Part shown: one piece after another, positions 3,866 to 59,813 of the stretch | How the letters are laid out: every line of letters begins with the position of its first letter | Numbering within the stretch: the first letter of the stretch is position 1 | Virus record (IMG/VR): IMGVR_UViG_3300046092_000062 | Coordinates: 1-64,000 of that record | Length of the DNA stretch: 64,000 nt | Reading direction: 5' to 3' (one strand) | Translations under genes and position numbers: made by a program | The notes under the pieces: model-generated | The model's database searches: none | What the model was told of the DNA's origin: nothing | The model's input: the letters and a program-made list of their open reading frames with translations, nothing else

Positions 3866-4735
3866 ATGAAACAGATTTTTCGATATTCCCCGCTAGACGC
3901 CTTGTTGTTATTGAACTTAATACTTGTTGGATCTATTCCATATATGGTAGCATACTTTGACCCTCCTGTATGGTCTTGGTTTTTGATTAGCGTATTCCAT
4001 ATTTGGTTTATTGTTAACGTGCAAAATACATGTTTACATCATCATGCTCATTGCAGCGTTTTTGTTTCAACGACTGCCAATAGAATATATGAATTATTTG
4101 TAAGTGCAGTAGCCGGATTACCGCTTCAATTATGGCGCTACGGGCACTTGCTACACCACAAGCACATAAATGATAAGCCAGTTAATGGTAAAACAAAAGA
4201 TCCAGTTTCTGTTTTTAAATATAGCAAAACGGATGAGCCTACTAATTTTTGGGTCTACTGCTGGAAATCTGCACTCTACGGTGACGCCAAGTGGTCTTGG
4301 GTATCAGTGATTCCTGACATTCTAAAAGTTAAAGAGTTGTATACTCGATTTAAAAGAGAACAATGGGCAGTTAGAATTTACTTGCTAAGTATATTTTTAA
4401 TAAATCCTGTGTACGGTTTATTTTTAATTCCAGTATACTTTTTAGCCTACTTTGTTAATAATGCAAATAGCTACGGGGAACACTGGGGAGTACTAGATCG
4501 CAGAGGCGATACTACACAGGACTCTATTGGCATTTATAGCACATGGTATAATATCTTTGGATTCGGTGCAGGGTACCATCAAGAACACCATCATAGACCG
4601 GGCGTTCATTGGACGCAAATGCACACGGTGACGTCGTCACTACACCCCGACAGAAAAATAGTTAAAGGGATACACATCCTAAACAATCCATTTTGGAGTC
4701 ACTTTAAGCTACTGTTTAAGAAAAACGCTAAATAG
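3866..4735 (+). CDS. Membrane fatty-acid desaturase/hydroxylase family protein
   Basis: Three His boxes (LHHHAH, HLLHHKH, HQEHHH) and hydrophobic TM segments. Confidence 0.8.
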   Translation: MKQIFRYSPLDALLLLNLILVGSIPYMVAYFDPPVWSWFLISVFHIWFIVNVQNTCLHHHAHCSVFVSTTANRIYELFVSAVAGLPLQLWRYGHLLHHKHINDKPVNGKTKDPVSVFKYSKTDEPTNFWVYCWKSALYGDAKWSWVSVIPDILKVKELYTRFKREQWAVRIYLLSIFLINPVYGLFLIPVYFLAYFVNNANSYGEHWGVLDRRGDTTQDSIGIYSTWYNIFGFGAGYHQEHHHRPGVHWTQMHTVTSSLHPDRKIVKGIHILNNPFWSHFKLLFKKNAK

Positions 4736-4819
4736 TATGTTCGCTCTTAATTGAGAGTTTATGCAGTTACCCAACTGCGTAGGCCTAGAACGCTATTCAC
4801 ATTTTTAAGGAGAAACAAA

Positions 4820-5770
4820 ATGGGACGTCCTTTAGCAAAAAGATTTTTCGGTAACCGTAACATCGGTACCAACGGTGGTTATACAGCAGACGATGGCATC
4901 GGCGGTGAAGGTGTAGCAAGCGCAGCAGTTAGCGGCGGTGCATACACAACTCGTCCAGTATTCACATTTACTGCACCATCATTACCGGCTGGCGTGACTG
5001 CTACTGCTACAGTAACATCAAAAGCAAAAACAGGTGCAGTAACTACAGCCGGTACAGGTTATGTAGTTGGTGATTTGTTAACTTTAACATCCACAGGCGG
5101 CTCTGCTATTGCTTATGTTGCAACAGTTGACACAGGCGGCGAGATTTTATCCGTTAACTTCAGTGGTACCGGCGCAAGCGTTGGTAGCTTTGAAGCATTG
5201 CCTGGTGCAAAATTTCCTTCTACCCCAACTGGTGGCCGTAGCTGCACAAGCAACAGCGTAGCAGGTACAGGTGCAGAAATTACTGTTACATTTGAAGCCC
5301 TATCAACGGTTATCACTAACAGCGGTTCTGGTTATACAGCAGCCCCAACAGCGGCAACTGGCCCAACACAGTCAGTTACACTAGGCGTAGTAACATTGAC
5401 AACAGACAGCGGCGATGTTGGTTCAGTAACTAACCAAGAAAATGCTATTATCGCTTACGCTTATGTAACTGGTAACAGCTTGGTTGCTGACATTAACGCA
5501 CAAAAAGGTAGCAACCGCTATCGCGTTACCACTAGCGAAGGTACAGAAGTATGTAAGCTAGTTGCAGCTACTCCAGCAGCGGTGGGCGAAATGTCTATTA
5601 CTGCTACAGACAGCAGCGGCAAGACTTACTATGTAACTAAGCTAACTAGCCACAACGCATTGTTAACACAATACGGCACAGCTGGGCACGAATTTACTGA
5701 CGGTACTATGGTTCGTTGGACATTTGATGCTCCTACATTGAACACTACTGTTCAAATTGCTAACGCTTAA
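4820..5770 (+). CDS. Virion structural protein (G/T/A-rich, fibre or decoration)
   Basis: Start MGRPLAKRFFG after AAGGAG; ITNSGSGYTAAPT-type repeats seen in phage structural proteins. Confidence 0.55.
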   Translation: MGRPLAKRFFGNRNIGTNGGYTADDGIGGEGVASAAVSGGAYTTRPVFTFTAPSLPAGVTATATVTSKAKTGAVTTAGTGYVVGDLLTLTSTGGSAIAYVATVDTGGEILSVNFSGTGASVGSFEALPGAKFPSTPTGGRSCTSNSVAGTGAEITVTFEALSTVITNSGSGYTAAPTAATGPTQSVTLGVVTLTTDSGDVGSVTNQENAIIAYAYVTGNSLVADINAQKGSNRYRVTTSEGTEVCKLVAATPAAVGEMSITATDSSGKTYYVTKLTSHNALLTQYGTAGHEFTDGTMVRWTFDAPTLNTTVQIANA

Positions 5771-12300: not shown

Positions 12301-14359
12301 TAACGTAAGAATTCAATCTGGTAATATCACCATTCAGAATCTGCTAGCAAACACAGTGGCAGCTGGAAATATATTCTCAGCAAACGTAAACTTTGATGGT
12401 GGTACAATTACTGGTATTAGTGGTAACGCGATTGTTTTCCACGTTGGTACCTTGTCTGCTAGTGTTGCAAATATCGTTGGTGGCACACTAACTAGCCTTA
12501 CAAACGTTGCTACTAATAATTTCTTTACCTCAAACGCATATATCACTGGCGGCGTAATTACTGGAGTCACAGTAGATGCGGATACATTAGGTGTAACTAA
12601 CTTCTCTACTGCCAACGCAGTACTAACCGGCGGTAGTATTGACTCAATGGCCATTGGGTTGAATGATCCGAGCTCAGGTAAATTTACGAATATTGAAACC
12701 ACTGGCGTAATTATAACCACCGGGAATCTAGTCATTGAGTCTACTGCTCCTTTATTAAACCCATTGGACGCAGCATTTATTATTCCCAATGGCGGCGCAG
12801 CAATTGGTGGCGATGCCTTTGTTAAAGGAACTCTAAACGTAGGCGAAGCTTCGTTAACTACAGCATTGTCTAACTCGTCTATCGCAGCAGTTAACGCAGT
12901 AGGCGACTTTGCACAGATGTACATGCTGAATACTACTAGCAGTGGTAGTGCAGACTTCTCAGCATACGGCGACAACGGAACTGACACCGGAGGCTGGTCA
13001 GACTTAGGTATGACTGGTAGTGAGTTTAGTGACCCTAACTACACTATCACTAAGCCAAATGACGGTTATGTAATTGTTCGTCCTCAATTGGGGTATGGCG
13101 GTAACTTAGTATTGGCCACAAGTGAAGTTGGAACACACAATGACGTGATCATTGGTGTTGGTAGCTTTGATGAATCCGCAGAAGTTGCACGTTTCCATGG
13201 CAACGCATCCACTGGCGGATACCTTCAGTTAACACAAGGCACCGCAGCAACAAGCACATCCACTGGTGCTTTGCGTATAATCGGCGGTGCCGGAGTAAGC
13301 GGAAATGTATACGTAGGCTCAAATCTTTCAGTCACAGGCACTAGTTTGTTAACTGGTAACGCAACCTTAAGTAAGGCCGTTACTATTAACAGTACCCAAA
13401 CAGCAGGCATGGACTTTAGGGTAGCAGGTGTAAACTCTAGTACTTTAATTTGGGCAAGACCTGACACCACATACGATCAGGTATTGATTGGTAATTCAGC
13501 AACAGTTGGAACATTAGTACAGGGTGCTAAGTTGTTCATTAACAGTACTGACAGTATGATGCTACCAGCTGGTACTAGTGGACAACGTCCTGGTAATAGT
13601 GGTGGGTCTGACGTACCGGGCATGTTCCGATACAACACTACATTAAATGCGATTGAATATTTTGGTGGTAGCGAAGGTGCGTGGAGTACAGTAAGTACAC
13701 AATTTACTTTAATTAGCGATCAACAGTTTAGTGGAACTGGGTCTCAAACAAACTTTACATTATCGTCTAATCAAACGACCAACAATTGTATTGTTAGTAT
13801 AAATGGTATCATTCAGCTGCCATTGTTGGCATACTCAATTACGGCCAACGTACTGACATTCACAACTGCGCCAGCTAACGGCACAGTAATTGACGTTCGT
13901 AAATTAACAACCACGAACCAAATTACTGAATTGGCGAGCCAAAATGATCGAGTGATTGTGGCAATGGACAACACTGCTGGTATTCAACTATACAGCGGCA
14001 CAAGTGGAAGAACATTGCAGCGCACACTAGATCCAAGTGGTGCATGGGTTGGGCAAACAGCACCAGTGGTAGTATTTGGTATTGATGTAGACACAGCAGT
14101 TGATATTTTCCCAACAGCAACCTATCGTAGTGCAAAATACTTGATTCAAGCTACAGTAACAGGAAAACATCAGGTCATGGAAGCATTAGTTATTCATGAC
14201 GGAACAACTGCAACAATTACCACTTATGGTATTGTGCAAACAAACGGAAACGTTGGCGTGCTATCGGCTACAGTAAGTGGTGGTAACGTTAATGTAAACT
14301 TTACAGCCGCTAACGCTAACACTAATGTTCGCGTAAGCAAGGAGTATGTGTTAATCTAA
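9353..14359 (+). CDS. Large repetitive tail fibre protein (1668 aa)
   Basis: Many ATNFS(T/S)GNAQITGG repeats; GALTVVGGIG fibre motif. Confidence 0.75.
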   Translation: MAVTRIKNNQITDSTITYTKIAAGTLVGSNFNQDLTLNSNISIVGNLTVTGVSSSVNSTNTYVNDPIVVFNNGYTGSLAGYDIGMLVNRNLASLAGYGSVNTAWVWVEADQAFEAITTTDTGNGITTINNSGFANVKIGNLNAVSGSFSGTIEATTLTGSHTGTAAFSTATATNFSTGNAQILGGNVQGIAYLQASSFSTGNAVITGGSLNAISIGATTPAAGFFTTATSAQSVITGNASVGGNLSVNGNIILVSGNITTANSAFFVGNTVTGFNALYAGIPAGYAILPQVVAQFSEDYNGYAQLNTQNINAGGSATTDYVATANNGSDTTFYVDLGIASDGYDGSSPNNSLGTALFQNDAYLYTQANTPSSYGGNLVLGTTTGQRFVKFVSGGGNVEHVVVEMSHAGATSTSTTSGALTVVGGIGATGDIYASSFNGNINTLNASVTNLTSGNVQITSGSITGITGAATTFAATNFSSGNAQISGGNAQGIVYLQSTNLSTGNALITGGSITGITGAATTFAATNFSSGNAQITGGSVTGVTGAATTLTATNFSTGNAQVTGGSLINFDAQSNTFTATNFSTGNAQISGGFIQGINTIQVDNFSTGNALVTGGSLTGVTGQFNTLVATNFSSGNIVGVLTGTASTANVSLYQTVNNSVVNTDFYPEFTDRYTTGNSAAYVSAAFKMNPYTGIFSASGVNVTAVTPSNSTGSGALIVTGGAGIGGNLYVGADAVVIGNLTVQGTMTAIQSQTLDVTDLNITVAKGAGSAAAANGAGITVDGAAASLVYASATDSWNFNKQVIGQFTTSNIQATGGSVTGITGAATTLTATNFSSGNAQITGGNAQGIGYLQSTNFSTGNALVTGGSVTGITGAATTFHVDNFSSGNIVGVLTGTASTANVSLYSEVTDTTNTANFYPMFTDRSTVGNSSAFVTSGITMNPGTNTVQATTFIGTFNGTASITSGSITGVTGAATYWHANNFSSANVRIQSGNITIQNLLANTVAAGNIFSANVNFDGGTITGISGNAIVFHVGTLSASVANIVGGTLTSLTNVATNNFFTSNAYITGGVITGVTVDADTLGVTNFSTANAVLTGGSIDSMAIGLNDPSSGKFTNIETTGVIITTGNLVIESTAPLLNPLDAAFIIPNGGAAIGGDAFVKGTLNVGEASLTTALSNSSIAAVNAVGDFAQMYMLNTTSSGSADFSAYGDNGTDTGGWSDLGMTGSEFSDPNYTITKPNDGYVIVRPQLGYGGNLVLATSEVGTHNDVIIGVGSFDESAEVARFHGNASTGGYLQLTQGTAATSTSTGALRIIGGAGVSGNVYVGSNLSVTGTSLLTGNATLSKAVTINSTQTAGMDFRVAGVNSSTLIWARPDTTYDQVLIGNSATVGTLVQGAKLFINSTDSMMLPAGTSGQRPGNSGGSDVPGMFRYNTTLNAIEYFGGSEGAWSTVSTQFTLISDQQFSGTGSQTNFTLSSNQTTNNCIVSINGIIQLPLLAYSITANVLTFTTAPANGTVIDVRKLTTTNQITELASQNDRVIVAMDNTAGIQLYSGTSGRTLQRTLDPSGAWVGQTAPVVVFGIDVDTAVDIFPTATYRSAKYLIQATVTGKHQVMEALVIHDGTTATITTYGIVQTNGNVGVLSATVSGGNVNVNFTAANANTNVRVSKEYVLI
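10730..10954 (+). repeat. 75-bp identical direct repeat (10730-10804, 10880-10954) within tail fibre repeat array
   Basis: GGATCAATCACTGGCATTACAGG...GGTAACGCACAAATC occurs twice, 150 nt apart. Confidence 0.9.
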
Positions 14360-54276: not shown

Positions 54277-54293
54277 AATGGTAAAAGTTGTAG

Positions 54294-54322
54294 TTGACAC
54301 AGAAAGACAAGTGTCATACAAT
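54294..54322 (+). promoter_or_regulatory. Sigma70 promoter
   Basis: TTGACA-N17-TACAAT. Confidence 0.85.
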
Positions 54323-54397
54323 TGAGGCTTGTAACAAACAAAGAAACGAAAGTTTAAACAAAGAGATAAATAAATTTACCAGATGTTGTTAAAGAGG

Positions 54398-54426
54398 TTG
54401 ACAACAAAGGTAAATAAACATACAAT
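54398..54426 (+). promoter_or_regulatory. Sigma70 promoter of the main tRNA operon
   Basis: TTGACA-N17-TACAAT; ATG 6 nt downstream. Confidence 0.85.
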
Positions 54427-54432
54427 ACTAAC

Positions 54433-54582
54433 ATGATGCAAAACATTCTTCATTCACTTAAACAACAACAGTCTACCTTAGGCACAGTGGCCTATTGGTC
54501 AGCGATGTCGTTTAGTTTGAATACGAATGATCGCGCACCGGAGATTAGTTTAGGGTTCTTAGAGGGAAGTGGTTACGCTTAA
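54433..54582 (+). CDS. Putative leaderless leader peptide (49 aa) of tRNA operon attenuator
   Basis: ATG at predicted +1; MMQNILHSLKQQQSTLGTVAYWSAMSFSLNTNDRAPEISLGFLEGSGYA*. Confidence 0.55.
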   Translation: MMQNILHSLKQQQSTLGTVAYWSAMSFSLNTNDRAPEISLGFLEGSGYA

Positions 54583-54608
54583 CAAGTAGTAGCTAACAAA
54601 CTTAAAGG

Positions 54609-54638
54609 ACCCTAGGATTAAAAACCCTAGGGTTTTTT
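54609..54638 (+). terminator. Intrinsic terminator / attenuator hairpin
   Basis: ACCCTAGG-loop-CCTAGGGT + TTTTT; left arm can alternatively pair with 54551-54560. Confidence 0.85.
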
Positions 54639-54655
54639 GTTTTAAGGAAGAAATT

Positions 54656-54808
54656 TTGAAGGTAGACTTTAATAAAAGAATTCGTGAAGTAAAGTTTACT
54701 GCCGAGCATACGCTAACAACAGAACAACGTAATACGTTGATTCAAGAAAAGTTAGAACGTGCAAGGAAGGAACTAGAAAGCCGTAAAAAGTTTTCACTTC
54801 ACGCATAG
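54656..54808 (+). CDS. Small hypothetical protein (50 aa, TTG start)
   Basis: AAGGAAG SD; charged helical sequence; first ORF after attenuator. Confidence 0.45.
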   Translation: MKVDFNKRIREVKFTAEHTLTTEQRNTLIQEKLERARKELESRKKFSLHA

Positions 54809-54969
54809 ACAGTGTTAGATAAGTGCTATATGCCCAGGTAACGAGGACCTGAAAGAACACTATAATAATCTTTAAACGGGCGGACAGTTGGATGAAATGC
54901 TGGCGGTAACAGCAGAGTACAAATAACTGGTTAGGGCATTGACCCTAACATATCCTGTAGCAATACAGG

Positions 54970-55048
54970 GTATTCACAAACAAACTAGACGAATCAATTA
55001 TATGATACATTATTGTTGGCAGCGACCCACTAGTTTGTTTATGAATAC
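54970..55048 (+). ncRNA. Long closed-stem RNA element
   Basis: GTATTCACAAACAAACTAG / CTAGTTTGTTTATGAATAC, one C-A mismatch. Confidence 0.55.
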
Positions 55049-55128
55049 CTTAAGGATGAAGATGATAGATAGATTCTGATTCTATACTATGTCCGAGCCC
55101 AGCGCCGGAAACCTTAAGGGATATATTT

Positions 55129-55282: not shown

Positions 55283-55284
55283 AG

Positions 55285-55431
55285 TTTTGAGATAGACGTA
55301 GGACTTGAGTCCCACATAGCATAGTGTAGTGTCTGCTACATGATAACGCCAGGCTGCTATAGTGGTTGATAAACTCGTCCATACGAGACAATCCAGTGAG
55401 TCCTCCCAGGAGGATAGTTGGGCTCTCAAAA
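55285..55431 (+). ncRNA. Multi-hairpin structured RNA
   Basis: TTTTGAGA...TCTCAAAA closing stem; inner hairpins GGACTTGAGTCC, CTCGTCCATACGAG, TCCTCCCAGGAGGA. Confidence 0.5.
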
Positions 55432-55439
55432 ATCTATTC

Positions 55440-55524
55440 GGGGTTTGAATACGTAACATATAGGACGAAACTGCGTGTAACTCACGTGGGCAGTATCAGG
55501 TGAAAGCCCTGACAAACTCCACCA
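55440..55524 (+). ncRNA. tRNA-like RNA with Ala-type acceptor and non-canonical arms
   Basis: GGGGTTTG/CAAACTCC-ACCA, G3:U70; 5-bp T-stem with TGAAAGC loop; no 7-nt anticodon loop. Confidence 0.6.
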
Positions 55525-55530
55525 ATTTTT

Positions 55531-55605
55531 AGGCTTGACATGAACTGGTGTTCATACTATCCTTACACGATAGATTAGGGAGTTCAATTCTCCACTAGCC
55601 CACCA
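55531..55605 (+). tRNA. trnV: tRNA-Val(TAC)
   Basis: CTATC-CTTACAC-GATAG; weak acceptor; CCA. Confidence 0.8.
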
Positions 55606-55612
55606 AGTTAAT

Positions 55613-55686
55613 CTGGGTATAGGATAATGGTAGTCGACGAGTCTTGGATACTCGAGGCGCTGGTTCGATTCCAGCTACCCAGACCA
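55613..55686 (+). tRNA. trnP: tRNA-Pro(TGG)
   Basis: CGAGT-CTTGGAT-ACTCG (A37); CCA. Confidence 0.9.
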
Positions 55687-55691
55687 ATCAC

Positions 55692-55780
55692 GGGGAGTTA
55701 TGCAGGCTGGGCCTGTCACGGTCTTGAAAACCGATGGACTGCGAAAGTGGTTAGAGTTCGATTCTACTATCTCCCCGCCA
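55692..55780 (+). tRNA. trnS: tRNA-Ser(TGA)
   Basis: Loop CTTGAAA, long variable arm, G73. Confidence 0.9.
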
Positions 55781-55786
55781 ATATAT

Positions 55787-55860
55787 TGCTCGTTAGCTCA
55801 ATGGTAGAGCAGTCGACTGATAATCGACCGACACAAGTTCGATTCTTGTACAAGCAACCA
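55787..55860 (+). tRNA. trnI: tRNA-Ile(GAT)
   Basis: GTCGA-CTGATAA-TCGAC; CCA. Confidence 0.9.
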
Positions 55861-55868
55861 AAGTTAAT

Positions 55869-55952
55869 GGATACTCGACACAGTTGGAGAGGTGTGGCTG
55901 GCTGTAACCCAGTTCGTAAAGTGAGTAGGTTCGATTCCTACAGTATCCACCA
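55869..55952 (+). tRNA. trnY: tRNA-Tyr(GTA)
   Basis: Loop CTGTAAC, long variable arm; CCA. Confidence 0.9.
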
Positions 55953-55959
55953 AGTTTAT

Positions 55960-56036
55960 ATACCAGTAGTTCCAATTGGCAGAACAGCAGTCTCCAAAAT
56001 TGCGTGTTGGGAGTTCGAATCTCTCCTGGTATGCCA
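55960..56036 (+). tRNA. trnW: tRNA-Trp(CCA) with A24
   Basis: Loop CTCCAAA, G73; D-stem GTTC/GAAC. Confidence 0.92.
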
Positions 56037-56041
56037 TATAC

Positions 56042-56117
56042 GCCCCTGAAACCTTTAATGGATGAGGTCCTGTCTTGTAAGCAGGAGAAGTCGGTTCGAT
56101 TCCGGACTGGGGCACCA
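56042..56117 (+). tRNA. trnT: tRNA-Thr(TGT)
   Basis: CCTGT-CTTGTAA-GCAGG; CCA. Confidence 0.88.
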
Positions 56118-56123
56118 AGTTAT

Positions 56124-56202
56124 TCCGAGAAATCCAAGCAAGGTGCAGGGACCTGACTGTTAATCAGTGGTTAGGTGGGTTCGATCCCCACACTCGGAGC
56201 CA
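56124..56202 (+). tRNA. trnN: tRNA-Asn(GTT)
   Basis: Loop CTGTTAA, G73; CCA. Confidence 0.88.
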
Positions 56203-56207
56203 ATCAT

Positions 56208-56379
56208 GTCTAGTTGGAAATGAAAGTAACCCAAAGGGAGCGACCTGAACAATCGCTGTCTAGTACGCTTACAAAGTAATTGTCCTGACTGTTCGACCCA
56301 AGAGGTGTTAAACCCGTAGATTCAGTTCCTACGCTCTCGCTCAAGGGATGTCGCTGTGTCACAGCAGCACTAGGCTCCA
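56208..56379 (+). ncRNA. 172-nt RNA closed by an acceptor-like stem ending in TCCA
   Basis: GTCTAGT/ACTAGGC-T-CCA; interior not a cloverleaf. Confidence 0.45.
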
Positions 56380-56387
56380 ATTTTTAT

Positions 56388-56462
56388 CACTGTGTTTAGC
56401 GGGTCTGCGCAAACCTTGCCAATAGATGGGAATGTGTATTTCGACGTACACCACAGTGGCCA
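56388..56462 (+). pseudogene. Degenerate tRNA (anticodon arm not assignable)
   Basis: CACTGTG/CACAGTG-G-CCA and T-arm present; D and anticodon stems poorly paired. Confidence 0.55.
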
Positions 56463-56469
56463 ATTTTGT

Positions 56470-56543
56470 TCGGGGATGGTGTAATGGTAACACAACAGAC
56501 TTTGACTCTGTCGTTCCGGGTTCGAGCCCCGGTTCCCGTGCCA
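56470..56543 (+). tRNA. trnQ: tRNA-Gln(TTG)
   Basis: ACAGA-CTTTGAC-TCTGT; CCA. Confidence 0.9.
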
Positions 56544-56550
56544 GTTTTAT

Positions 56551-56625
56551 AGTTCCTTAGTTCAGCGGTAGAACGCTACATTGACATTGTAGAGGTCAGT
56601 GGTTCGACACCACTAGGAACTACCA
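56551..56625 (+). tRNA. trnV: tRNA-Val(GAC)
   Basis: CTACA-TTGACAT-TGTAG; CCA. Confidence 0.92.
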
Positions 56626-56628
56626 AAT

Positions 56629-56704
56629 GCAACTTTAGCTGATGTGGTCATAGCGGTGGTCTGAAGAGCCATTGAAGCAGGTTCGATCCCTGCAGGTTGC
56701 ACCA
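56629..56704 (+). tRNA. trnF: tRNA-Phe(GAA)
   Basis: Loop CTGAAGA (G37); CCA. Confidence 0.9.
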
Positions 56705-56714
56705 AAATTTAAAT

Positions 56715-56791
56715 GCCCCGTTACGCTAATTGGTAGTGCGGATTCTCTCAAAAGGAGTTGGCTGTCTGTTCGAATCAGACACGGGGTACCA
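56715..56791 (+). tRNA. trnL: tRNA-Leu(CAA), short variable loop
   Basis: Loop CTCAAAA; 5-nt variable region; CCA. Confidence 0.85.
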
Positions 56792-56797
56792 TACAAT

Positions 56798-56874
56798 GCC
56801 TTCGTACGCTAATTGGTAGTGCGGATAGTTTTAGAAACTGTTGGTTGGGGGTTCGAATCCGCCCGAAGGTACCA
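56798..56874 (+). tRNA. trnL: tRNA-Leu(TAG), short variable loop
   Basis: Loop TTTAGAA; same D-arm as neighbours; CCA. Confidence 0.85.
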
Positions 56875-56877
56875 CAT

Positions 56878-56954
56878 GCCCCTGTACGCTAATTGGTAGT
56901 GCGGACAGACTTAAAATCTTTTGGTTGCAGGTTCGAATCCAGCCAGGGGTACCA
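56878..56954 (+). tRNA. trnL: tRNA-Leu(TAA), short variable loop
   Basis: Loop CTTAAAA; same D-arm; CCA. Confidence 0.85.
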
Positions 56955-56957
56955 AAT

Positions 56958-56986
56958 TTGACACTTAATGAAATGGCTGCTATAAT
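56958..56986 (+). promoter_or_regulatory. Consensus sigma70 promoter (second at 57053-57081, TTGTCC-N17-TACAAT)
   Basis: TTGACA-N17-TATAAT. Confidence 0.92.
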
Positions 56987-57181
56987 ACACACATGTTAAG
57001 AAATTAGCATAAAGTGCAGAGTAGCATAAAAACAACAGTTAGAAAATAACAGTTGTCCAATAAAGAAATTGGTGCTACAATACATACATGTTAAACAAAC
57101 AACGCAGCGCAGTGATCGTACTGTAATGCTAACAGTCTTTAAAAAGATACTGTCATATATCCCTGTTAAGTTCAGGGCTCT

Positions 57182-57262
57182 ATATGCAAACACATTAATT
57201 AACCTGGAGTGCGGTCACAGGGCATCGCAAGGTGTGGTAGCCGTGTTAATGTGTTTACATAT
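57182..57262 (+). ncRNA. Closed-stem RNA element, copy 1
   Basis: ATATGCAAACACATTA ... TAATGTGTTTACATAT. Confidence 0.6.
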
Positions 57263-57265
57263 AGT

Positions 57266-57340
57266 GGAGCTATCGTCTATCGGTTAGGACATCTGGTTTT
57301 CATCCAGGCAAGCGGGGTTCGATTCCCCGTAGCTCTTCCA
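57266..57340 (+). tRNA. trnE: tRNA-Glu(TTC)
   Basis: Loop TTTTCAT; CCA. Confidence 0.88.
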
Positions 57341-57414
57341 AGTTTTTACATTGTTTAAACCGCGGCTGATTTTAAAGTCGGATGAAGGCGAAACTAACAA
57401 TGTGATTCTATTTT

Positions 57415-57559
57415 GTGCTTCATACTATCAATTGGGAGAGCATTACCTAAAACACTAAGTAGGACATCGACAGTAAAGGCCAGTGGCCTAGGATGTGTAA
57501 GCCGTAAGTATACGGTATGTTCAGGTGATGTGTGTAGGTTCGAATCCTACTGATGTACA
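57415..57559 (+). ncRNA. tRNA-like RNA with ~75-nt insert in the anticodon loop
   Basis: Acceptor GTGCTTC/GATGTAC-A (G3:U70), TTACCT/AGGTGA stem around insert, GTAGG-TTCGAAT-CCTAC T-arm; CCA not encoded. Confidence 0.6.
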
Positions 57560-57567
57560 CAAGTTAT

Positions 57568-57719
57568 GCGGGGTCTCACATGGTGTGGCTGAAGAGATTG
57601 ATCACTCGGAGGCGAATGCGAAAATGCGAGGCCTTATGCAAGCAACCCCAAAGAGTAATTCCGAGTAAGGCACTGTAAGCATAAGGGCTTTCAGGGTTCG
57701 AATCCCACGCCCTGCACCA
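57568..57719 (+). ncRNA. tRNA-like RNA with pseudoknotted insert replacing the anticodon loop
   Basis: GCGGGGT/GCCCTGC-A-CCA (G3:U70), TTCGAAT T-loop; ACTCGGA/TCCGAGT and CCTTATGC/GCATAAGG helices cross. Confidence 0.65.
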
Positions 57720-57787
57720 ATCAAGACACATCAAAGTAGCGACTATTGCTGGAGGCGGTAGCACGTAATTAGTGTGTCGAGTTTTTC

Positions 57788-57926
57788 GTGGTAAGTCTGG
57801 AGACAAGTTATTTGACTGTATGCGTAGCAGGATTGCAAACCCGAGGGGCATATGGCGATGGGAAGTGATATCACCCGTTTGTAAAAACAGATGACTAGTT
57901 GGGTTCAACTCCCAATTACTACACCA
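57788..57926 (+). ncRNA. tRNA-like RNA (139 nt) with Ala-type acceptor and long insert
   Basis: GTGGTAA/TTACTAC-A-CCA (G3:U70); TTGGG-TTCAACT-CCCAA T-arm. Confidence 0.65.
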
Positions 57927-58000
57927 TATGCAAACACATTATACAAACCTGAATCAGCAATAGCATTGCAAAGGTTTAAATGTGTAGTGTGTTTACATAT
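57926..58000 (+). ncRNA. Closed-stem RNA element, copy 2
   Basis: Same ATATGCAAACACATTA / TGTGTTTACATAT ends as 57182, different interior. Confidence 0.6.
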
Positions 58001-58002
58001 TG

Positions 58003-58281: not shown

Positions 58282-58282
58282 A

Positions 58283-58740
58283 GAATACTAAGACAACACT
58301 TAGTAAGATGAGTAGACGGAAACCGACCCGGGAGAGAATTCCCGGGCTTCAATAATACGAATCACCGGCGAAACGCTGCGGGTCCCGCCCGCTGTATTAT
58401 TGACGAACGATAAGCAAAGTCGGTCCAGTAGGGGTAAGAAAAGTGTTGTTAGCGGAAAGAGCTGCAACGAGACAGAAGTTAAGCGGGCATAGGCCGACAG
58501 TTTAACGCCGTGTATTCTCGAACTAATTCAAGAATTGATCGGAAAGCAAGAGCCGAAGAGTAGACACTAGCGAATGGCGGGCTGCGTTCGCATAAGTTGG
58601 GATAACTGACTAGTAGGGTAAGAGTCCCTAGTATGCCTCCTAATTCACAAATGTAAGATAGTTGCAAATGCGTCCTGCAGGTAAGTTTGCAACCGTAACA
58701 TCACAGACGGGCGACTCTGTGTAAGAAATACGACCCAGAA
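58283..58740 (+). ncRNA. Large (~450 nt) multi-domain structured ncRNA candidate
   Basis: No credible ORF; many hairpins plus long-range ACAACACTT/AAGTGTTGT and CAATAATAC/GTATTATTG helices, between tRNAs. Confidence 0.6.
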
Positions 58741-58746
58741 ATTTAT

Positions 58747-59658: not shown

Positions 59659-59732
59659 AGCGGGTAGGGCGGCCACCACTCCAGTCTCATAAGCTCGGAG
59701 CATCGCAAGTTCAAATCTTGCACCCGCATCCA
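59659..59732 (+). tRNA. tRNA-CAT with 1:72 mismatch and reduced D-arm (initiator-like?)
   Basis: Loop CTCATAA; A1/A72 unpaired; CCA. Confidence 0.7.
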
Positions 59733-59737
59733 TATAA

Positions 59738-59813
59738 GGGGGATTAGCTCATTTGGGAGAGCGGCTGCTTTGCAAGCAGTAGGTGACCAGTTCGATCCTG
59801 GTATCCTCCACCA
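59738..59813 (+). tRNA. trnA: tRNA-Ala(TGC)
   Basis: Loop TTTGCAA; G3:U70; CCA. Confidence 0.93.

What the first reader, a model, noticed from the sequence alone, without database searches (positions are those of the whole stretch)
55440..57926. Family of four anticodon-less tRNA-like RNAs that all carry alanine identity (G3:U70, A73)
Seen: elements at 55440-55524, 57415-57559, 57568-57719 and 57788-57926 each have a 7-bp acceptor-type stem with G3:U70 and discriminator A, and a T-arm. Three encode CCA. All replace the anticodon arm with unrelated structure, in 85-152 nt RNAs. Their sequences differ, so the shared G3:U70 looks selected. Established: G3:U70 is the anticodon-independent AlaRS determinant and is how tmRNA is charged. 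Inference: these are alanylatable non-decoding RNAs, e.g. minimal tmRNA-like rescue RNAs, Ala donors, EF-Tu/AlaRS sponges or decoys for tRNA-sensing defences. They are too short for canonical tmRNA.
Basis: partly seen in the sequence, partly recalled or inferred. Interest (0 to 1): 0.82.

Follow-up and report, generated by a model that had tools for sequence, protein, structure and literature searches.

The report
Alanine-type tRNA-like RNAs in a phage
A giant freshwater phage carries, inside its tRNA gene array, four conserved tRNA-shaped RNAs that cannot read codons but keep the exact mark that lets the cell's alanine-loading enzyme charge an RNA, a combination so far known essentially only from the ribosome-rescue RNA tmRNA.

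Summary
All four elements are at the stated coordinates. Each closes with an acceptor stem carrying G3:U70 and A73, each has a T arm, and three encode CCA. ARAGORN and Rfam call none of them.

They are real structured RNAs. Each has homologues in related jumbo-phage contigs with compensatory base changes: 9 of 46 pairs in E2, and 4 of 5 T-stem pairs in E4.

G3:U70 never changes in any full-length homologue. In 448 ordinary tRNAs from related arrays, G3:U70 plus A73 occurs in all 20 tRNA-Ala. Otherwise it occurs only in two odd "Val" calls that belong to the same class.

Splicing into ordinary tRNAs, decaying genes and canonical tmRNA are not supported.

Most likely these are non-decoding RNAs matured like tRNAs and charged by host AlaRS. 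The tRNA-like half would carry family-specific domains. E3 and E4 loops hold self-complementary sequences that stay palindromic as they mutate, which suggests dimerisation.

Charging is inferred, not shown. Caveats:
- Minor alanine determinants are incomplete in E2-E4.
- One relative has G73 in both E2 and E3.
- Short E3 relatives and other long tRNA-like families lack the mark.

The closest known analogue is T4 species 1 RNA. The biological role is unknown.

The parts
55440..55524 (+). E1: 85-nt tRNA-like RNA. Acceptor strands 55440-55446 and 55514-55520 (G1-C72, G2-C71, G3.U70, G4-C69), A73 at 55521, CCA at 55522-55524. It has a 7-bp internal stem with pentaloop UAACU and a non-canonical T loop.
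   Evidence: Sequence. Copies 98.8-100% identical lie in two other phage contigs whose flanks are only about 82% identical; the single change, A-U to G.U, keeps a T-stem pair. No ARAGORN or Rfam call.
57415..57559 (+). E2: 145-nt tRNA-like RNA. It has an 8-bp closing stem (57415-57422 with 57551-57558, G3.U70), A73 at 57559 and no encoded CCA. The T arm is at 57534-57550. A 9-bp stem at the anticodon-arm position opens into a branched domain.
   Evidence: Homologues in L015, L019 and L093 are 87-92% identical. There are 46 predicted pairs, 9 with changes on both sides, and 97.8% of cells are paired against 30-42% when partners are slid. Pairs 1-4 are invariant.
57568..57719 (+). E3: 152-nt tRNA-like RNA. 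Acceptor strands 57568-57574 and 57709-57715 (G3.U70), A73 at 57716, CCA at 57717-57719. D arm at 57577-57587. The arm at the anticodon position has an 8-nt loop holding the palindrome UGAUCA (57599-57604). A variable-arm insertion lies at about 57626-57692. The T arm is at 57693-57707.
   Evidence: Homologues: L093 and L101 (72%, full length), a 101-nt form in L092, L070 and L034, and 79-nt relatives in L020 and L066. The acceptor is invariant in the six full-type copies, and the outer and inner stems of the anticodon-position arm covary.
57788..57926 (+). E4: 139-nt tRNA-like RNA. Acceptor strands 57788-57794 and 57916-57922 (G3.U70), A73 at 57923, CCA at 57924-57926. The T arm is at 57899-57915. 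A 9-bp stem opens into a three-way junction. Two of its apical loops carry self-complementary sequences (57833-57838 and 57866-57873).
   Evidence: Eight contigs carry it at 74-98% identity. The acceptor and ACCA are invariant, 4 of 5 T-stem pairs change on both sides, and 96.9% of cells are paired against 39-45% when slid. The covariance model scores members at 107-164 bits and everything else at 26 bits or less.
56958..56986 (+). Consensus sigma-70-type promoter (TTGACA, 17 nt, TATAAT with an upstream TG). It lies ahead of tRNA-Glu, E2, E3 and E4 on the same strand.
   Evidence: 12 of 12 match. The same sequence is conserved in L015. RNA-run contig depth is low across this spacer and high downstream.

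Best explanation
E1-E4 are four unrelated families of stable, non-decoding tRNA-like RNAs. They are transcribed as part of the phage's tRNA array and cut out by the ordinary tRNA-processing enzymes.

Their acceptor/T-arm half is kept as a functional module. It gives defined ends and a CCA tail. Through G3.U70 with A73, it also makes them substrates of the host alanyl-tRNA synthetase, which needs no anticodon.

Once charged they would look like Ala-tRNA to EF-Tu and to 3'-end surveillance, but they cannot decode. The other half of each RNA is a family-specific structured domain that carries the actual function. In E3 and E4 this domain displays self-complementary loops, which suggests that the RNAs pair with themselves into dimers or larger assemblies.

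Shown: the RNAs' existence as conserved structures, their tRNA-like ends, the invariance of the alanine mark, and its specificity to tRNA-Ala in these genomes.

Inferred: processing, charging, EF-Tu binding and dimerisation. The biological role is not known.
For: Conserved structure with compensatory changes in E2, E3 and E4, and near-identity of E1 against diverged flanks.

Conservation starts exactly at G1 and stops at the CCA. Each element follows the preceding gene after the same short spacer of about 5-12 nt that separates ordinary tRNAs.

G3.U70 is unchanged in 3 of 3 E1 copies, 4 of 4 E2, 6 of 6 full-type E3 and 8 of 8 E4. In E4, most other G.U pairs switch to Watson-Crick pairs in at least one homologue. 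In E2, pairs 5 and 6 of the stem covary but pairs 1-4 do not.

G3:U70 with A73 is exclusive to tRNA-Ala among 448 array tRNAs. The only exceptions are two 78-nt 'Val(aac)' calls, which have 7-bp stems and 5-nt loops and so belong to the same class.

Further alanine-marked non-decoding elements occur in relatives: a 109-nt element at L020:7997-8105, a 70-nt element at L017:287-356, and a 215-nt element in an unrelated 607-kb phage contig.

G3:U70 is the portable major AlaRS determinant, and it confers alanylation in vivo on odd tRNAs (PMC9976931; PMC5389517).

In the randomly primed metatranscriptome X16, contig depth over E2-E4 is 70-295, against 0-9 over the promoter spacer.

The palindromes in the E3 and E4 loops change sequence but stay self-complementary.
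Against: No direct evidence of charging or of the mature ends. The RNA runs are held only as contigs and may contain DNA.

Of the bacterial minor alanine determinants (G2-C71, G4-C69, A73), only E1 has all three. E2 and E4 have U2-A71, E3 has C2-G71, and E2 has C4-G69.

In L093 both E2 and E3 carry G73, while that phage's tRNA-Ala keeps A73.

The 79-nt E3 relatives and one 70-nt element have C3-G70 with G73. Other long tRNA-like families in the same arrays (257 nt and 165 nt) lack the mark. So alanine identity is common in this class but not obligatory.

E1's T loop is non-canonical, and E3's T stem has only 3-4 pairs.

The palindrome evidence rests on only three variants per loop, and 6-nt palindromes are not rare by chance (about 2 per element).
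Confidence: 0.5

Rival explanations
1. tRNA-Ala mimics acting as decoys or sponges. The RNAs copy the acceptor end of tRNA-Ala to soak up a host factor that reads it, such as a tRNA-targeting defence nuclease or toxin, AlaRS itself, EF-Tu or a trans-editing factor. Charging may or may not occur.
For: The same alanine mark and invariant acceptor stems as in the best explanation. Phage tRNA arrays are discussed as counter-defence loci (titles, e.g. PMC13096335 and PMC12803027). The elements come and go as cassettes among close relatives, as accessory anti-defence genes do. The coordinated G73 in E2 and E3 of L093, while its tRNA-Ala keeps A73, hints at a shared reader other than the one that constrains tRNA-Ala.
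Against: No known defence system is tied to the tRNA-Ala acceptor end in these hosts, and the host is unknown. A decoy does not explain the elaborate, strongly covarying inserted domains. Nothing here was testable.
Confidence: 0.17
2. A tRNA chassis without charging. The tRNA-like half serves only for RNase P/3'-end processing and stability of an embedded functional RNA, as in laboratory tRNA scaffolds. G3.U70 would then be kept for some other reason, or be a relic of descent from tRNA-Ala genes.
For: T4 species 1 RNA (139 nt) in the T4 tRNA cluster has the same plan: a canonical T arm and a closing stem of 5 of 7 pairs around a large structured insert. It has A3-U70 and no CCA, so the plan can exist without alanine identity. 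The 257-nt and 165-nt families in related arrays also lack the mark.
Against: Four families with unrelated sequences and different acceptor stems all carry G3.U70 with A73, and never lose the weak G.U pair in their homologues. In the same genomes the pair is otherwise exclusive to tRNA-Ala. A relic would be expected to drift to G-C or A-U.
Confidence: 0.15
3. Minimal tmRNA-like rescue RNAs. Charged with alanine, they would enter stalled ribosomes with SmpB and release them or tag the product.
For: They share the defining tRNA-like-domain features of tmRNA: G3.U70, A73, CCA, a T arm and no anticodon. A possible pseudoknot and short frames exist in the E3 insert (MRGLMQ... in the window, MSDFIQ* and MIDFIQ* in L093 and L101; read). 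The 215-nt element in the 607-kb contig gives a sub-threshold tmRNA hit (24.4 bits against a cut-off of 47).
Against: ARAGORN finds no tmRNA, and Rfam's tmRNA models give nothing for E1-E4. At 85-152 nt they are too short. No frame is conserved across each family: the 101-nt E3 form lacks the AUG and the frame, and changes in the E4 'frame' follow the loop palindrome rather than codons. E3 has a D arm and an extra arm that tmRNA lacks.
Confidence: 0.08
4. Interrupted or decaying tRNA genes: tRNAs with introns that are spliced out, or pseudogenes.
For: At relaxed thresholds ARAGORN can force intron models (E2 as Phe(aaa) with a 50-nt intron, E3 as Ile(aat) with a 46-nt intron). E3's 79-nt relatives are tRNA-sized.
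Against: The forced models ignore the conserved ends or the covarying helices. The putative E2 'anticodon loop' is not conserved: CUAAAAC in the window becomes CAUAACA in L015. The inserts are the best-conserved and most strongly covarying parts. They are too short for group I introns and gave no intron model hit in Rfam. RNA-run contigs show no joint inside E2 or E4; the joints seen are whole-cassette differences between relatives.
Confidence: 0.03

Closest known systems
tmRNA (SsrA), tRNA-like domain
   Same: An acceptor stem with G3.U70, A73 and CCA, a T arm and no anticodon. It is charged by AlaRS independently of any anticodon. A long helix leaves the tRNA-like core where the anticodon arm would be.
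   Different: tmRNA is about 230-400 nt with pseudoknots and a conserved tag reading frame, and it works with SmpB. E1-E4 are 85-152 nt, have no conserved frame, are not found by ARAGORN or the Rfam tmRNA models, and E3 has D and anticodon-position arms.
Phage T4 species 1 RNA (rnaC), with species 2 (rnaD)
   Same: A stable RNA of unknown function encoded at the end of a phage tRNA cluster, on the same strand and in the same transcript as the tRNAs (PMC2330249). It is 139 nt. It has a canonical T arm (CCGGG-UUCGAAU-CCCGG) and a closing stem around a large structured insert.
   Different: No sequence similarity. The T4 RNA has A3-U70, two UxU mismatches in the closing stem and no encoded CCA, so it has no alanine identity. 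The E4 covariance model scores it 17.8 bits, like any tRNA.
Allo-tRNAs and other odd tRNAs bearing G3:U70 (Mukai et al. 2016, PMC5389517)
   Same: Non-standard cloverleaves, some from phages, in which a G3:U70 pair was proposed as, and tested in E. coli as, an AlaRS charging determinant. They were suggested to act as regulatory non-coding RNAs in some cases.
   Different: Allo-tRNAs keep a 7-nt anticodon loop and decode. E1-E4 do not.
tRNA-like structures at the 3' ends of plant RNA viruses
   Same: Viral RNAs that mimic the acceptor end of a tRNA and are aminoacylated by host enzymes without decoding.
   Different: Those lie at the ends of RNA genomes, are built through a pseudoknotted acceptor, and accept Val, His or Tyr. 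Here the elements are free-standing genes in a DNA phage with a normal acceptor stem and an alanine mark. The only Rfam Tymo_tRNA-like hit in the region (28.8 bits, below threshold) falls on a neighbouring odd tRNA-Val-like gene, not on E1-E4.
Engineered tRNA scaffolds for expressing structured RNAs (from my own knowledge, not checked here)
   Same: An RNA of interest replaces the anticodon arm, so that the cell processes and stabilises it like a tRNA. This is the plan of E2 and E4.
   Different: A laboratory design, not tied to alanine identity.

Membership tests
Bacterial alanine identity set (A73, G2-C71, G3.U70, G4-C69; PMC9976931) | G3.U70 wobble pair, third pair from the end of the acceptor helix | tested here: met
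   Present in E1-E4 and in all 21 full-type homologous copies. Among ordinary tRNAs of these arrays it is otherwise exclusive to tRNA-Ala.
Bacterial alanine identity set (A73, G2-C71, G3.U70, G4-C69; PMC9976931) | A73 discriminator | tested here: met
   A73 in all four window elements. Among homologues the only exceptions are E2 and E3 of L093, which have G73.
Bacterial alanine identity set (A73, G2-C71, G3.U70, G4-C69; PMC9976931) | Minor determinants G2-C71 and G4-C69 | tested here: inconclusive
   E1 has both. E3 and E4 have G4-C69 but C2-G71 or U2-A71. E2 has neither. One of the phage's own tRNA-Ala genes also has C4-G69.
Bacterial alanine identity set (A73, G2-C71, G3.U70, G4-C69; PMC9976931) | Actual alanylation by AlaRS | not testable with these tools
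   Needs an enzyme assay or charge-sensitive sequencing.
tmRNA | tRNA-like domain: G3.U70, A73, CCA, T arm, no anticodon | tested here: met
   E2 lacks an encoded CCA.
tmRNA | Recognised by tmRNA gene models | tested here: not met
   ARAGORN with tmRNA search finds nothing. Rfam tmRNA and tmRNA_permuted give no hit on E1-E4 at E<=10.
tmRNA | Conserved tag reading frame with resume codon and stop, plus pseudoknots | tested here: not met
   Short frames can be read in E3 and E4, but they are not kept across homologues (sequences). One possible pseudoknot in the E3 insert is unresolved.
tmRNA | SmpB-dependent entry into stalled ribosomes | not testable with these tools
   No SmpB gene could be searched for in the rest of the 320-kb contig. 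Biochemistry is needed.
Canonical (decoding) tRNA | 5-bp anticodon stem with a 7-nt loop, detected by tRNA models | tested here: not met
   No ARAGORN call. The Rfam tRNA model gives at most 16 bits, on the T arm of E2 only. The loops are 5 nt (E1), 8 nt (E3) or replaced by junctions (E2, E4).
Intron-containing tRNA | Removing an insert restores a standard tRNA; spliced form present in RNA | tested here: not met
   Only forced, non-conserved models appear at relaxed thresholds. There is no joint inside E2 or E4 in four RNA runs, although contigs can miss rare forms.
T4 species-1-type RNA (long tRNA-like stable RNA of a phage tRNA cluster) | Encoded within or at the end of a phage tRNA cluster on the same strand, about 120-150 nt, with a T arm and closing stem around a large insert | tested here: met
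   for the plan. This is a likeness of design, and homology is not shown: there is no sequence similarity, and the E4 model scores T4 rnaC at tRNA level.
Y RNA-like YrlA | Match to the YrlA model, with a Ro-binding stem formed by the 5' and 3' ends | tested here: not met
   The only YrlA hit in the window (22.3 bits against a cut-off of 69) lies on ordinary tRNAs at 59682-59792. In E1-E4 the ends form a tRNA acceptor stem instead.

The most novel reading that the evidence does not exclude
A previously unrecognised class of phage RNAs. They would be aminoacylated (alanine-charged) but non-decoding tRNA-like molecules that carry ornate domains. Some would self-associate through palindromic kissing loops into dimers or larger assemblies that present several Ala-CCA ends. 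The phage would use them to manipulate the host translation or tRNA-surveillance machinery (EF-Tu, stalled ribosomes, tRNA-directed defences), or as alanine donors. If so, tmRNA would no longer be the only free-standing anticodon-less RNA that cells charge with alanine.
Probability: 0.2. Interest if true: 0.9.

Novelty: new variant of a known kind. Interest (0 to 1): 0.75.

Why it matters
Long tRNA-like stable RNAs in phage tRNA clusters have been known since T4's species 1 and 2 RNAs, and they remain unexplained. This clade offers several such families with a clear, testable handle: they keep the alanine-charging mark.

If they are charged, they are the first free-standing aminoacylated non-decoding RNAs besides tmRNA. 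They would also show that phages build functional RNAs on a chargeable tRNA chassis.

The finding further shows that the "gaps" in large phage tRNA arrays are dense with conserved structured RNAs that standard annotation misses.

Tried and rejected
Rfam at gathering and at E<=10, on the whole array and on short sub-windows, placed E1-E4 in no family.

blastn of the region against 50,697 phage records matched only ordinary tRNAs.

ARAGORN with intron search gave only forced models.

Neighbour-gene searches:
- The FG-GAP protein upstream of the array gave only two array-bearing relatives among 11 viral loci.
- The DUF7448 gene search in metagenome contigs returned 12 arrays, none with E1-E4.

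A loose 14-base E3 pattern returned about 120 mostly chance loci. It still happened to include the real E3 and E2 homologues in L034, L066, L070, L092, L093 and L101.

The E4 core pattern in GTDB genomes gave one hit inside a planctomycete coding region. This is a chance match with no tRNAs nearby.

My first E4 fold, with an 8-bp stem UUGCAAAC/GUUUGUAA, was dropped. L018 breaks it, and the alignment supports CUGUAUGC/GCAUAUGG instead.

My first-pass E3 pseudoknot (ACUCGGA/UCCGAGU) was set aside in favour of the covarying arm at the anticodon position.

E1 as part of a 162-nt element closing on the next gene's 3' strand was rejected, because the downstream flank differs in L002 and L014.

PA5oct is the nearest cultured relative (TerL 53.5% identical). 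Its first 40 kb, holding its two abundant ncRNAs, has no tRNAs and nothing similar.

A passing resemblance of 58282-58746 to RNase P RNA was not supported by Rfam.

Literature searches found no prior description of alanine-marked tRNA-like RNAs in phage arrays.

Full report
CONTEXT

The window is the first 64 kb of a 320,767-bp viral contig, IMGVR_UViG_3300046092_000062. Sequencing runs that hold it are freshwater and wastewater metagenomes. Its large terminase is 53.5% identical to that of Pseudomonas jumbo phage PA5oct and its relatives.

From 53990 to the window's end lies a tRNA array on the + strand. ARAGORN tRNAs and no tmRNA. The four elements of the finding sit in the uncalled gaps of this array.

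THE OBSERVATION

Read directly, each element closes with an acceptor-type stem whose third pair is G.U. Each is followed by A, and each has a T arm just before the 3' strand.
- E1 (55440-55524) is GGGGUUU/AAACUCC + A + CCA.
- E2 (57415-57559) is an 8-bp stem GUGCUUCA/UGAUGUAC + A, with a U5xU68 mismatch and no CCA.
- E3 (57568-57719) is GCGGGGU/GCCCUGC + A + CCA.
- E4 (57788-57926) is GUGGUAA/UUACUAC + A + CCA.

No tRNA, tmRNA or other Rfam model reaches them, even at E<=10 on short sub-windows. Single-sequence folding closes the acceptor stems, but the energies are not unusual (z -0.8 to -1.8). The case therefore rests on comparison with homologues.

HOMOLOGUES AND STRUCTURE

E1 recurs at 98.8-100% identity in two other phage contigs, whose flanking sequence is only about 82% identical. 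The single difference turns an A-U pair of the T stem into G.U.

E4 occurs in eight contigs at 74-98% identity.
- Its acceptor stem and ACCA are invariant.
- Four of five T-stem pairs change on both sides.
- The alignment supports a 9-bp stem at the anticodon-arm position, opening into a three-way junction.
- 96.9% of cells are paired, against 39-45% when partners are slid.
- A covariance model separates the family (107-164 bits) from everything else (26 bits or less). Ordinary tRNAs align to it end to end at low score, which shows how tRNA-like its frame is.

E2 has homologues in L015, L019 and L093.
- Of 46 predicted pairs, 9 change on both sides in only three distinct sequences.
- None of 500 shuffles reached that number.
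- The slid controls give zero such pairs.

E3 has full-length homologues in L093 and L101 (72%) and a 101-nt form in L092, L070 and L034. It also has 79-nt relatives in L020 and L066. Comparing them shows four parts:
- a D arm;
- an arm at the anticodon position, whose outer and inner stems covary and which ends in an 8-nt loop;
- a conserved linker;
- an insertion of 0, about 16 or about 70 nt at the variable-arm position.

It is only loosely true for E1 (7-bp stem with a 5-nt loop) and for E3.

The four families show no similarity to one another by blastn.

ENDS

In every family, conservation begins exactly at G1 and stops at the CCA (at N73 in E2). Each element follows the previous gene after the same short AU-rich spacer that separates ordinary tRNAs in the array.

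A perfect sigma-70 consensus promoter lies at 56958-56986, upstream of tRNA-Glu, E2, E3 and E4.

This anatomy is what tRNA-type processing predicts. Processing itself was not observed.

THE ALANINE MARK

I extracted the 3:70 pair and N73 from 448 distinct ARAGORN tRNAs of this and related arrays.
- All 20 tRNA-Ala have G3:U70 with A73.
- No ordinary tRNA of another isotype has both.
- The only other carriers are two 78-nt "Val(aac)" calls, at L020:7912-7989 and L017:625-702. These fold with 7-bp stems and 5-nt loops, so they are members of the same non-decoding class.

The mark therefore means alanine in these genomes, and four of four cannot be chance.

It is also selected. G3.U70 is unchanged in 3 of 3 E1, 4 of 4 E2, 6 of 6 full-type E3 and 8 of 8 E4 copies. 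In E4, most other G.U pairs flip to Watson-Crick pairs in some homologue. In E2, pairs 5 and 6 of the same stem covary while pairs 1-4 do not.

G3.U70 is the major and portable AlaRS determinant, and introducing it confers alanine acceptance (PMC9976931). Odd tRNAs carrying G3:U70 were tested for alanylation in E. coli (PMC5389517).

More alanine-marked non-decoding elements turned up in relatives:
- a 109-nt element at L020:7997-8105;
- a 70-nt element at L017:287-356;
- a 215-nt element in an unrelated 607-kb phage contig, which gives a sub-threshold tmRNA hit.

CAVEATS

- Only E1 has the full bacterial acceptor set. E2-E4 lack G2-C71, and E2 also lacks G4-C69.
- In L093 both E2 and E3 have G73, while that phage's tRNA-Ala keeps A73.
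- The 79-nt E3 relatives have C3-G70 with G73. So does the L015 copy of the 70-nt family, whose L017 copy has G3.U70 with A73.
- A 257-nt family and a 165-nt family of long tRNA-like RNAs in the same arrays have other ends.

Alanine identity is therefore strongly enriched in this class, but not universal.

RNA EVIDENCE

Four metatranscriptome runs hold contigs over the region. In the randomly primed run X16, depth is 0-9 over the promoter spacer (56889-57239). It is 178 over tRNA-Glu and 70-295 over E2-E4. This looks like transcription rather than DNA carry-over, but contig depths are crude and sum over relatives.

The joints seen are differences between relatives: E2+E3 absent, E2 absent, or E1 replaced by 77 other letters. 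The one joint inside E3 is a replaced insert. None lies inside E2 or E4.

Comparison of loci shows the same cassette-like gain and loss. For example, L015 has an odd tRNA-Ala-like gene where the window has E1.

RIVALS TESTED

- Introns or pseudogenes: ARAGORN's intron mode gives only forced models that ignore the conserved ends, and the E2 "anticodon" differs between homologues. The inserts are the most constrained parts.
- tmRNA: no model hit, too short, and no frame kept across homologues.
- T4 species 1 RNA: I fetched it. It has the same overall plan (139 nt, canonical T arm, closing stem around a large insert) but has A3-U70 and no CCA. It is the closest known analogue in design, without the alanine mark and without detectable homology.

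SELF-COMPLEMENTARY LOOPS

The 8-nt loop of the E3 arm contains UGAUCA (window, L020, L066), UCAUGA (L093, L092) or UAAUUG (L101).

The 11-nt loop of one E4 hairpin contains UGAUAUCA, UAACGUUA or UAAUAUUA. A second E4 loop contains UUGCAA or UAAUUA.

The sequences differ but stay self-complementary, including at the two central positions, which cannot pair within a single hairpin. That points to pairing between two copies (kissing dimers), with predicted duplex energies from about 0 to -7.4 kcal/mol.

This rests on three variants per loop, and 6-nt palindromes are common by chance. It is a lead, not a result.

VERDICT

This phage clade encodes at least six structurally distinct families of non-decoding tRNA-like RNAs that keep the alanine mark.

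The best reading is that they are chargeable tRNA-chassis RNAs carrying functional domains. I give that whole reading a confidence of 0.5. Separately, my rough estimates are about 0.9 that they are real structured RNAs and about 0.6 that they are alanylated.

Their role is unknown. Decoy, chassis-only and tmRNA-like rescue functions remain open in that order, and interrupted tRNA genes are very unlikely.

Noticed in passing
window 55283-55439: A conserved RNA of about 155 nt sits immediately upstream of E1, with homologues in at least nine other loci. Of 37 predicted pairs, 14 show changes on both sides. It has strongly conserved unpaired stretches and an internal repeat of GAUAG and GAGUCC motifs. 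There is no Rfam hit. It behaves as its own cassette: it is followed by E1 here and by a tRNA-Ala-like gene in L015.
   Followed up: partly
window 58282-58746: A 465-nt intergenic stretch after tRNA-Tyr is partly conserved in L015, L016, L020, L093 and L101. It has the highest RNA-run contig depth in the region (3596 in X17, 587 in X16 at 58293-58400). It has no ORF of 80 aa or more and no Rfam hit at E<=10. It is probably an abundant unknown non-coding RNA.
   Followed up: partly
window 54277-55128: The 852-nt gap between tRNA-Leu and tRNA-Ala has no ORF of 80 aa or more, yet it is 74-99% conserved in six or more related arrays. Its last part (about 54940-55128) is 83-94% identical in five loci. 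More conserved non-coding RNA or very small genes are likely here.
   Followed up: partly
window 57192-57274 and 57926-58001; also L002:17063-17150 and L014 around 4100-4185: A repeated long hairpin whose arms begin ATATGCAAACAC and end GTGTTTACATAT, with variable centres, flanks tRNA-Glu and E4. One relative lacks the second copy (joint 57926>58008). It may be a processing or termination signal, or a recombination site.
   Followed up: no
window 55537-55609, 55692-55776, 56124-56199, 56389-56462: Four further genes are missed by ARAGORN. The first is a Val(UAC)-like tRNA with an A1xC72 mismatch, and its best Rfam hit is the valine-accepting Tymo_tRNA-like model at 28.8 bits. The second is a Ser(UGA)-like tRNA that hits the tRNA-Sec model at 42.9 bits. 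The third is a borderline tRNA (29.3 bits). The fourth is a weak tRNA-like element.
   Followed up: partly
L002:10739-10995, L015:9785-10041, L017:364-617(-), L014:5190-5442(-): A 254-257-nt tRNA-like family has acceptor UUCGUUA/UAACGAA, G73 and CCA. It carries a large insertion in the D loop and an 8-bp stem enclosing about 130 nt at the anticodon position. It lacks the alanine mark and is absent from the window.
   Followed up: partly
L015:10969-11038 and L017:287-356(-): A 70-nt D-arm-less tRNA-like family has a conserved 8-nt loop, AUUUGAAG. One copy has G3.U70 with A73 and the other has C3-G70 with G73. The same two end states separate full-type E3 from its 79-nt relatives, as if identity switches as a unit.
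   Followed up: partly
L093:9535-9842: In this one relative both E2 and E3 have G73 instead of A73, while its tRNA-Ala (13284-13359) keeps A73. This is a coordinated change in two unrelated families within one genome.
   Followed up: partly
L037:9668-9882(-), from a 607,744-bp viral contig: A 215-nt element at the end of an unrelated phage's tRNA array has GGGGGCG/CGCCUCC, A73, CCA and a normal D arm. It has no anticodon loop and a structured insert of about 125 nt. It gives a sub-threshold Rfam tmRNA hit (24.4 bits against 47), and ARAGORN does not call it.
   Followed up: partly
L020:7440-7830 and L002:8577-9815: Protein genes are embedded in related arrays, both identified from my own reading of their translations with no family search run. 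One looks like an HNH-type endonuclease. The other is a protein of about 410 aa with an SGGxDS (PP-loop) motif, next to an unusually long (92 nt) tRNA-Ile(tat). These may relate to cassette shuffling and to tRNA modification.
   Followed up: no
window 4743-4822: A match to the freshwater-2 RNA motif lies above Rfam's threshold (56.6 bits against 49.9), far from the array.
   Followed up: no
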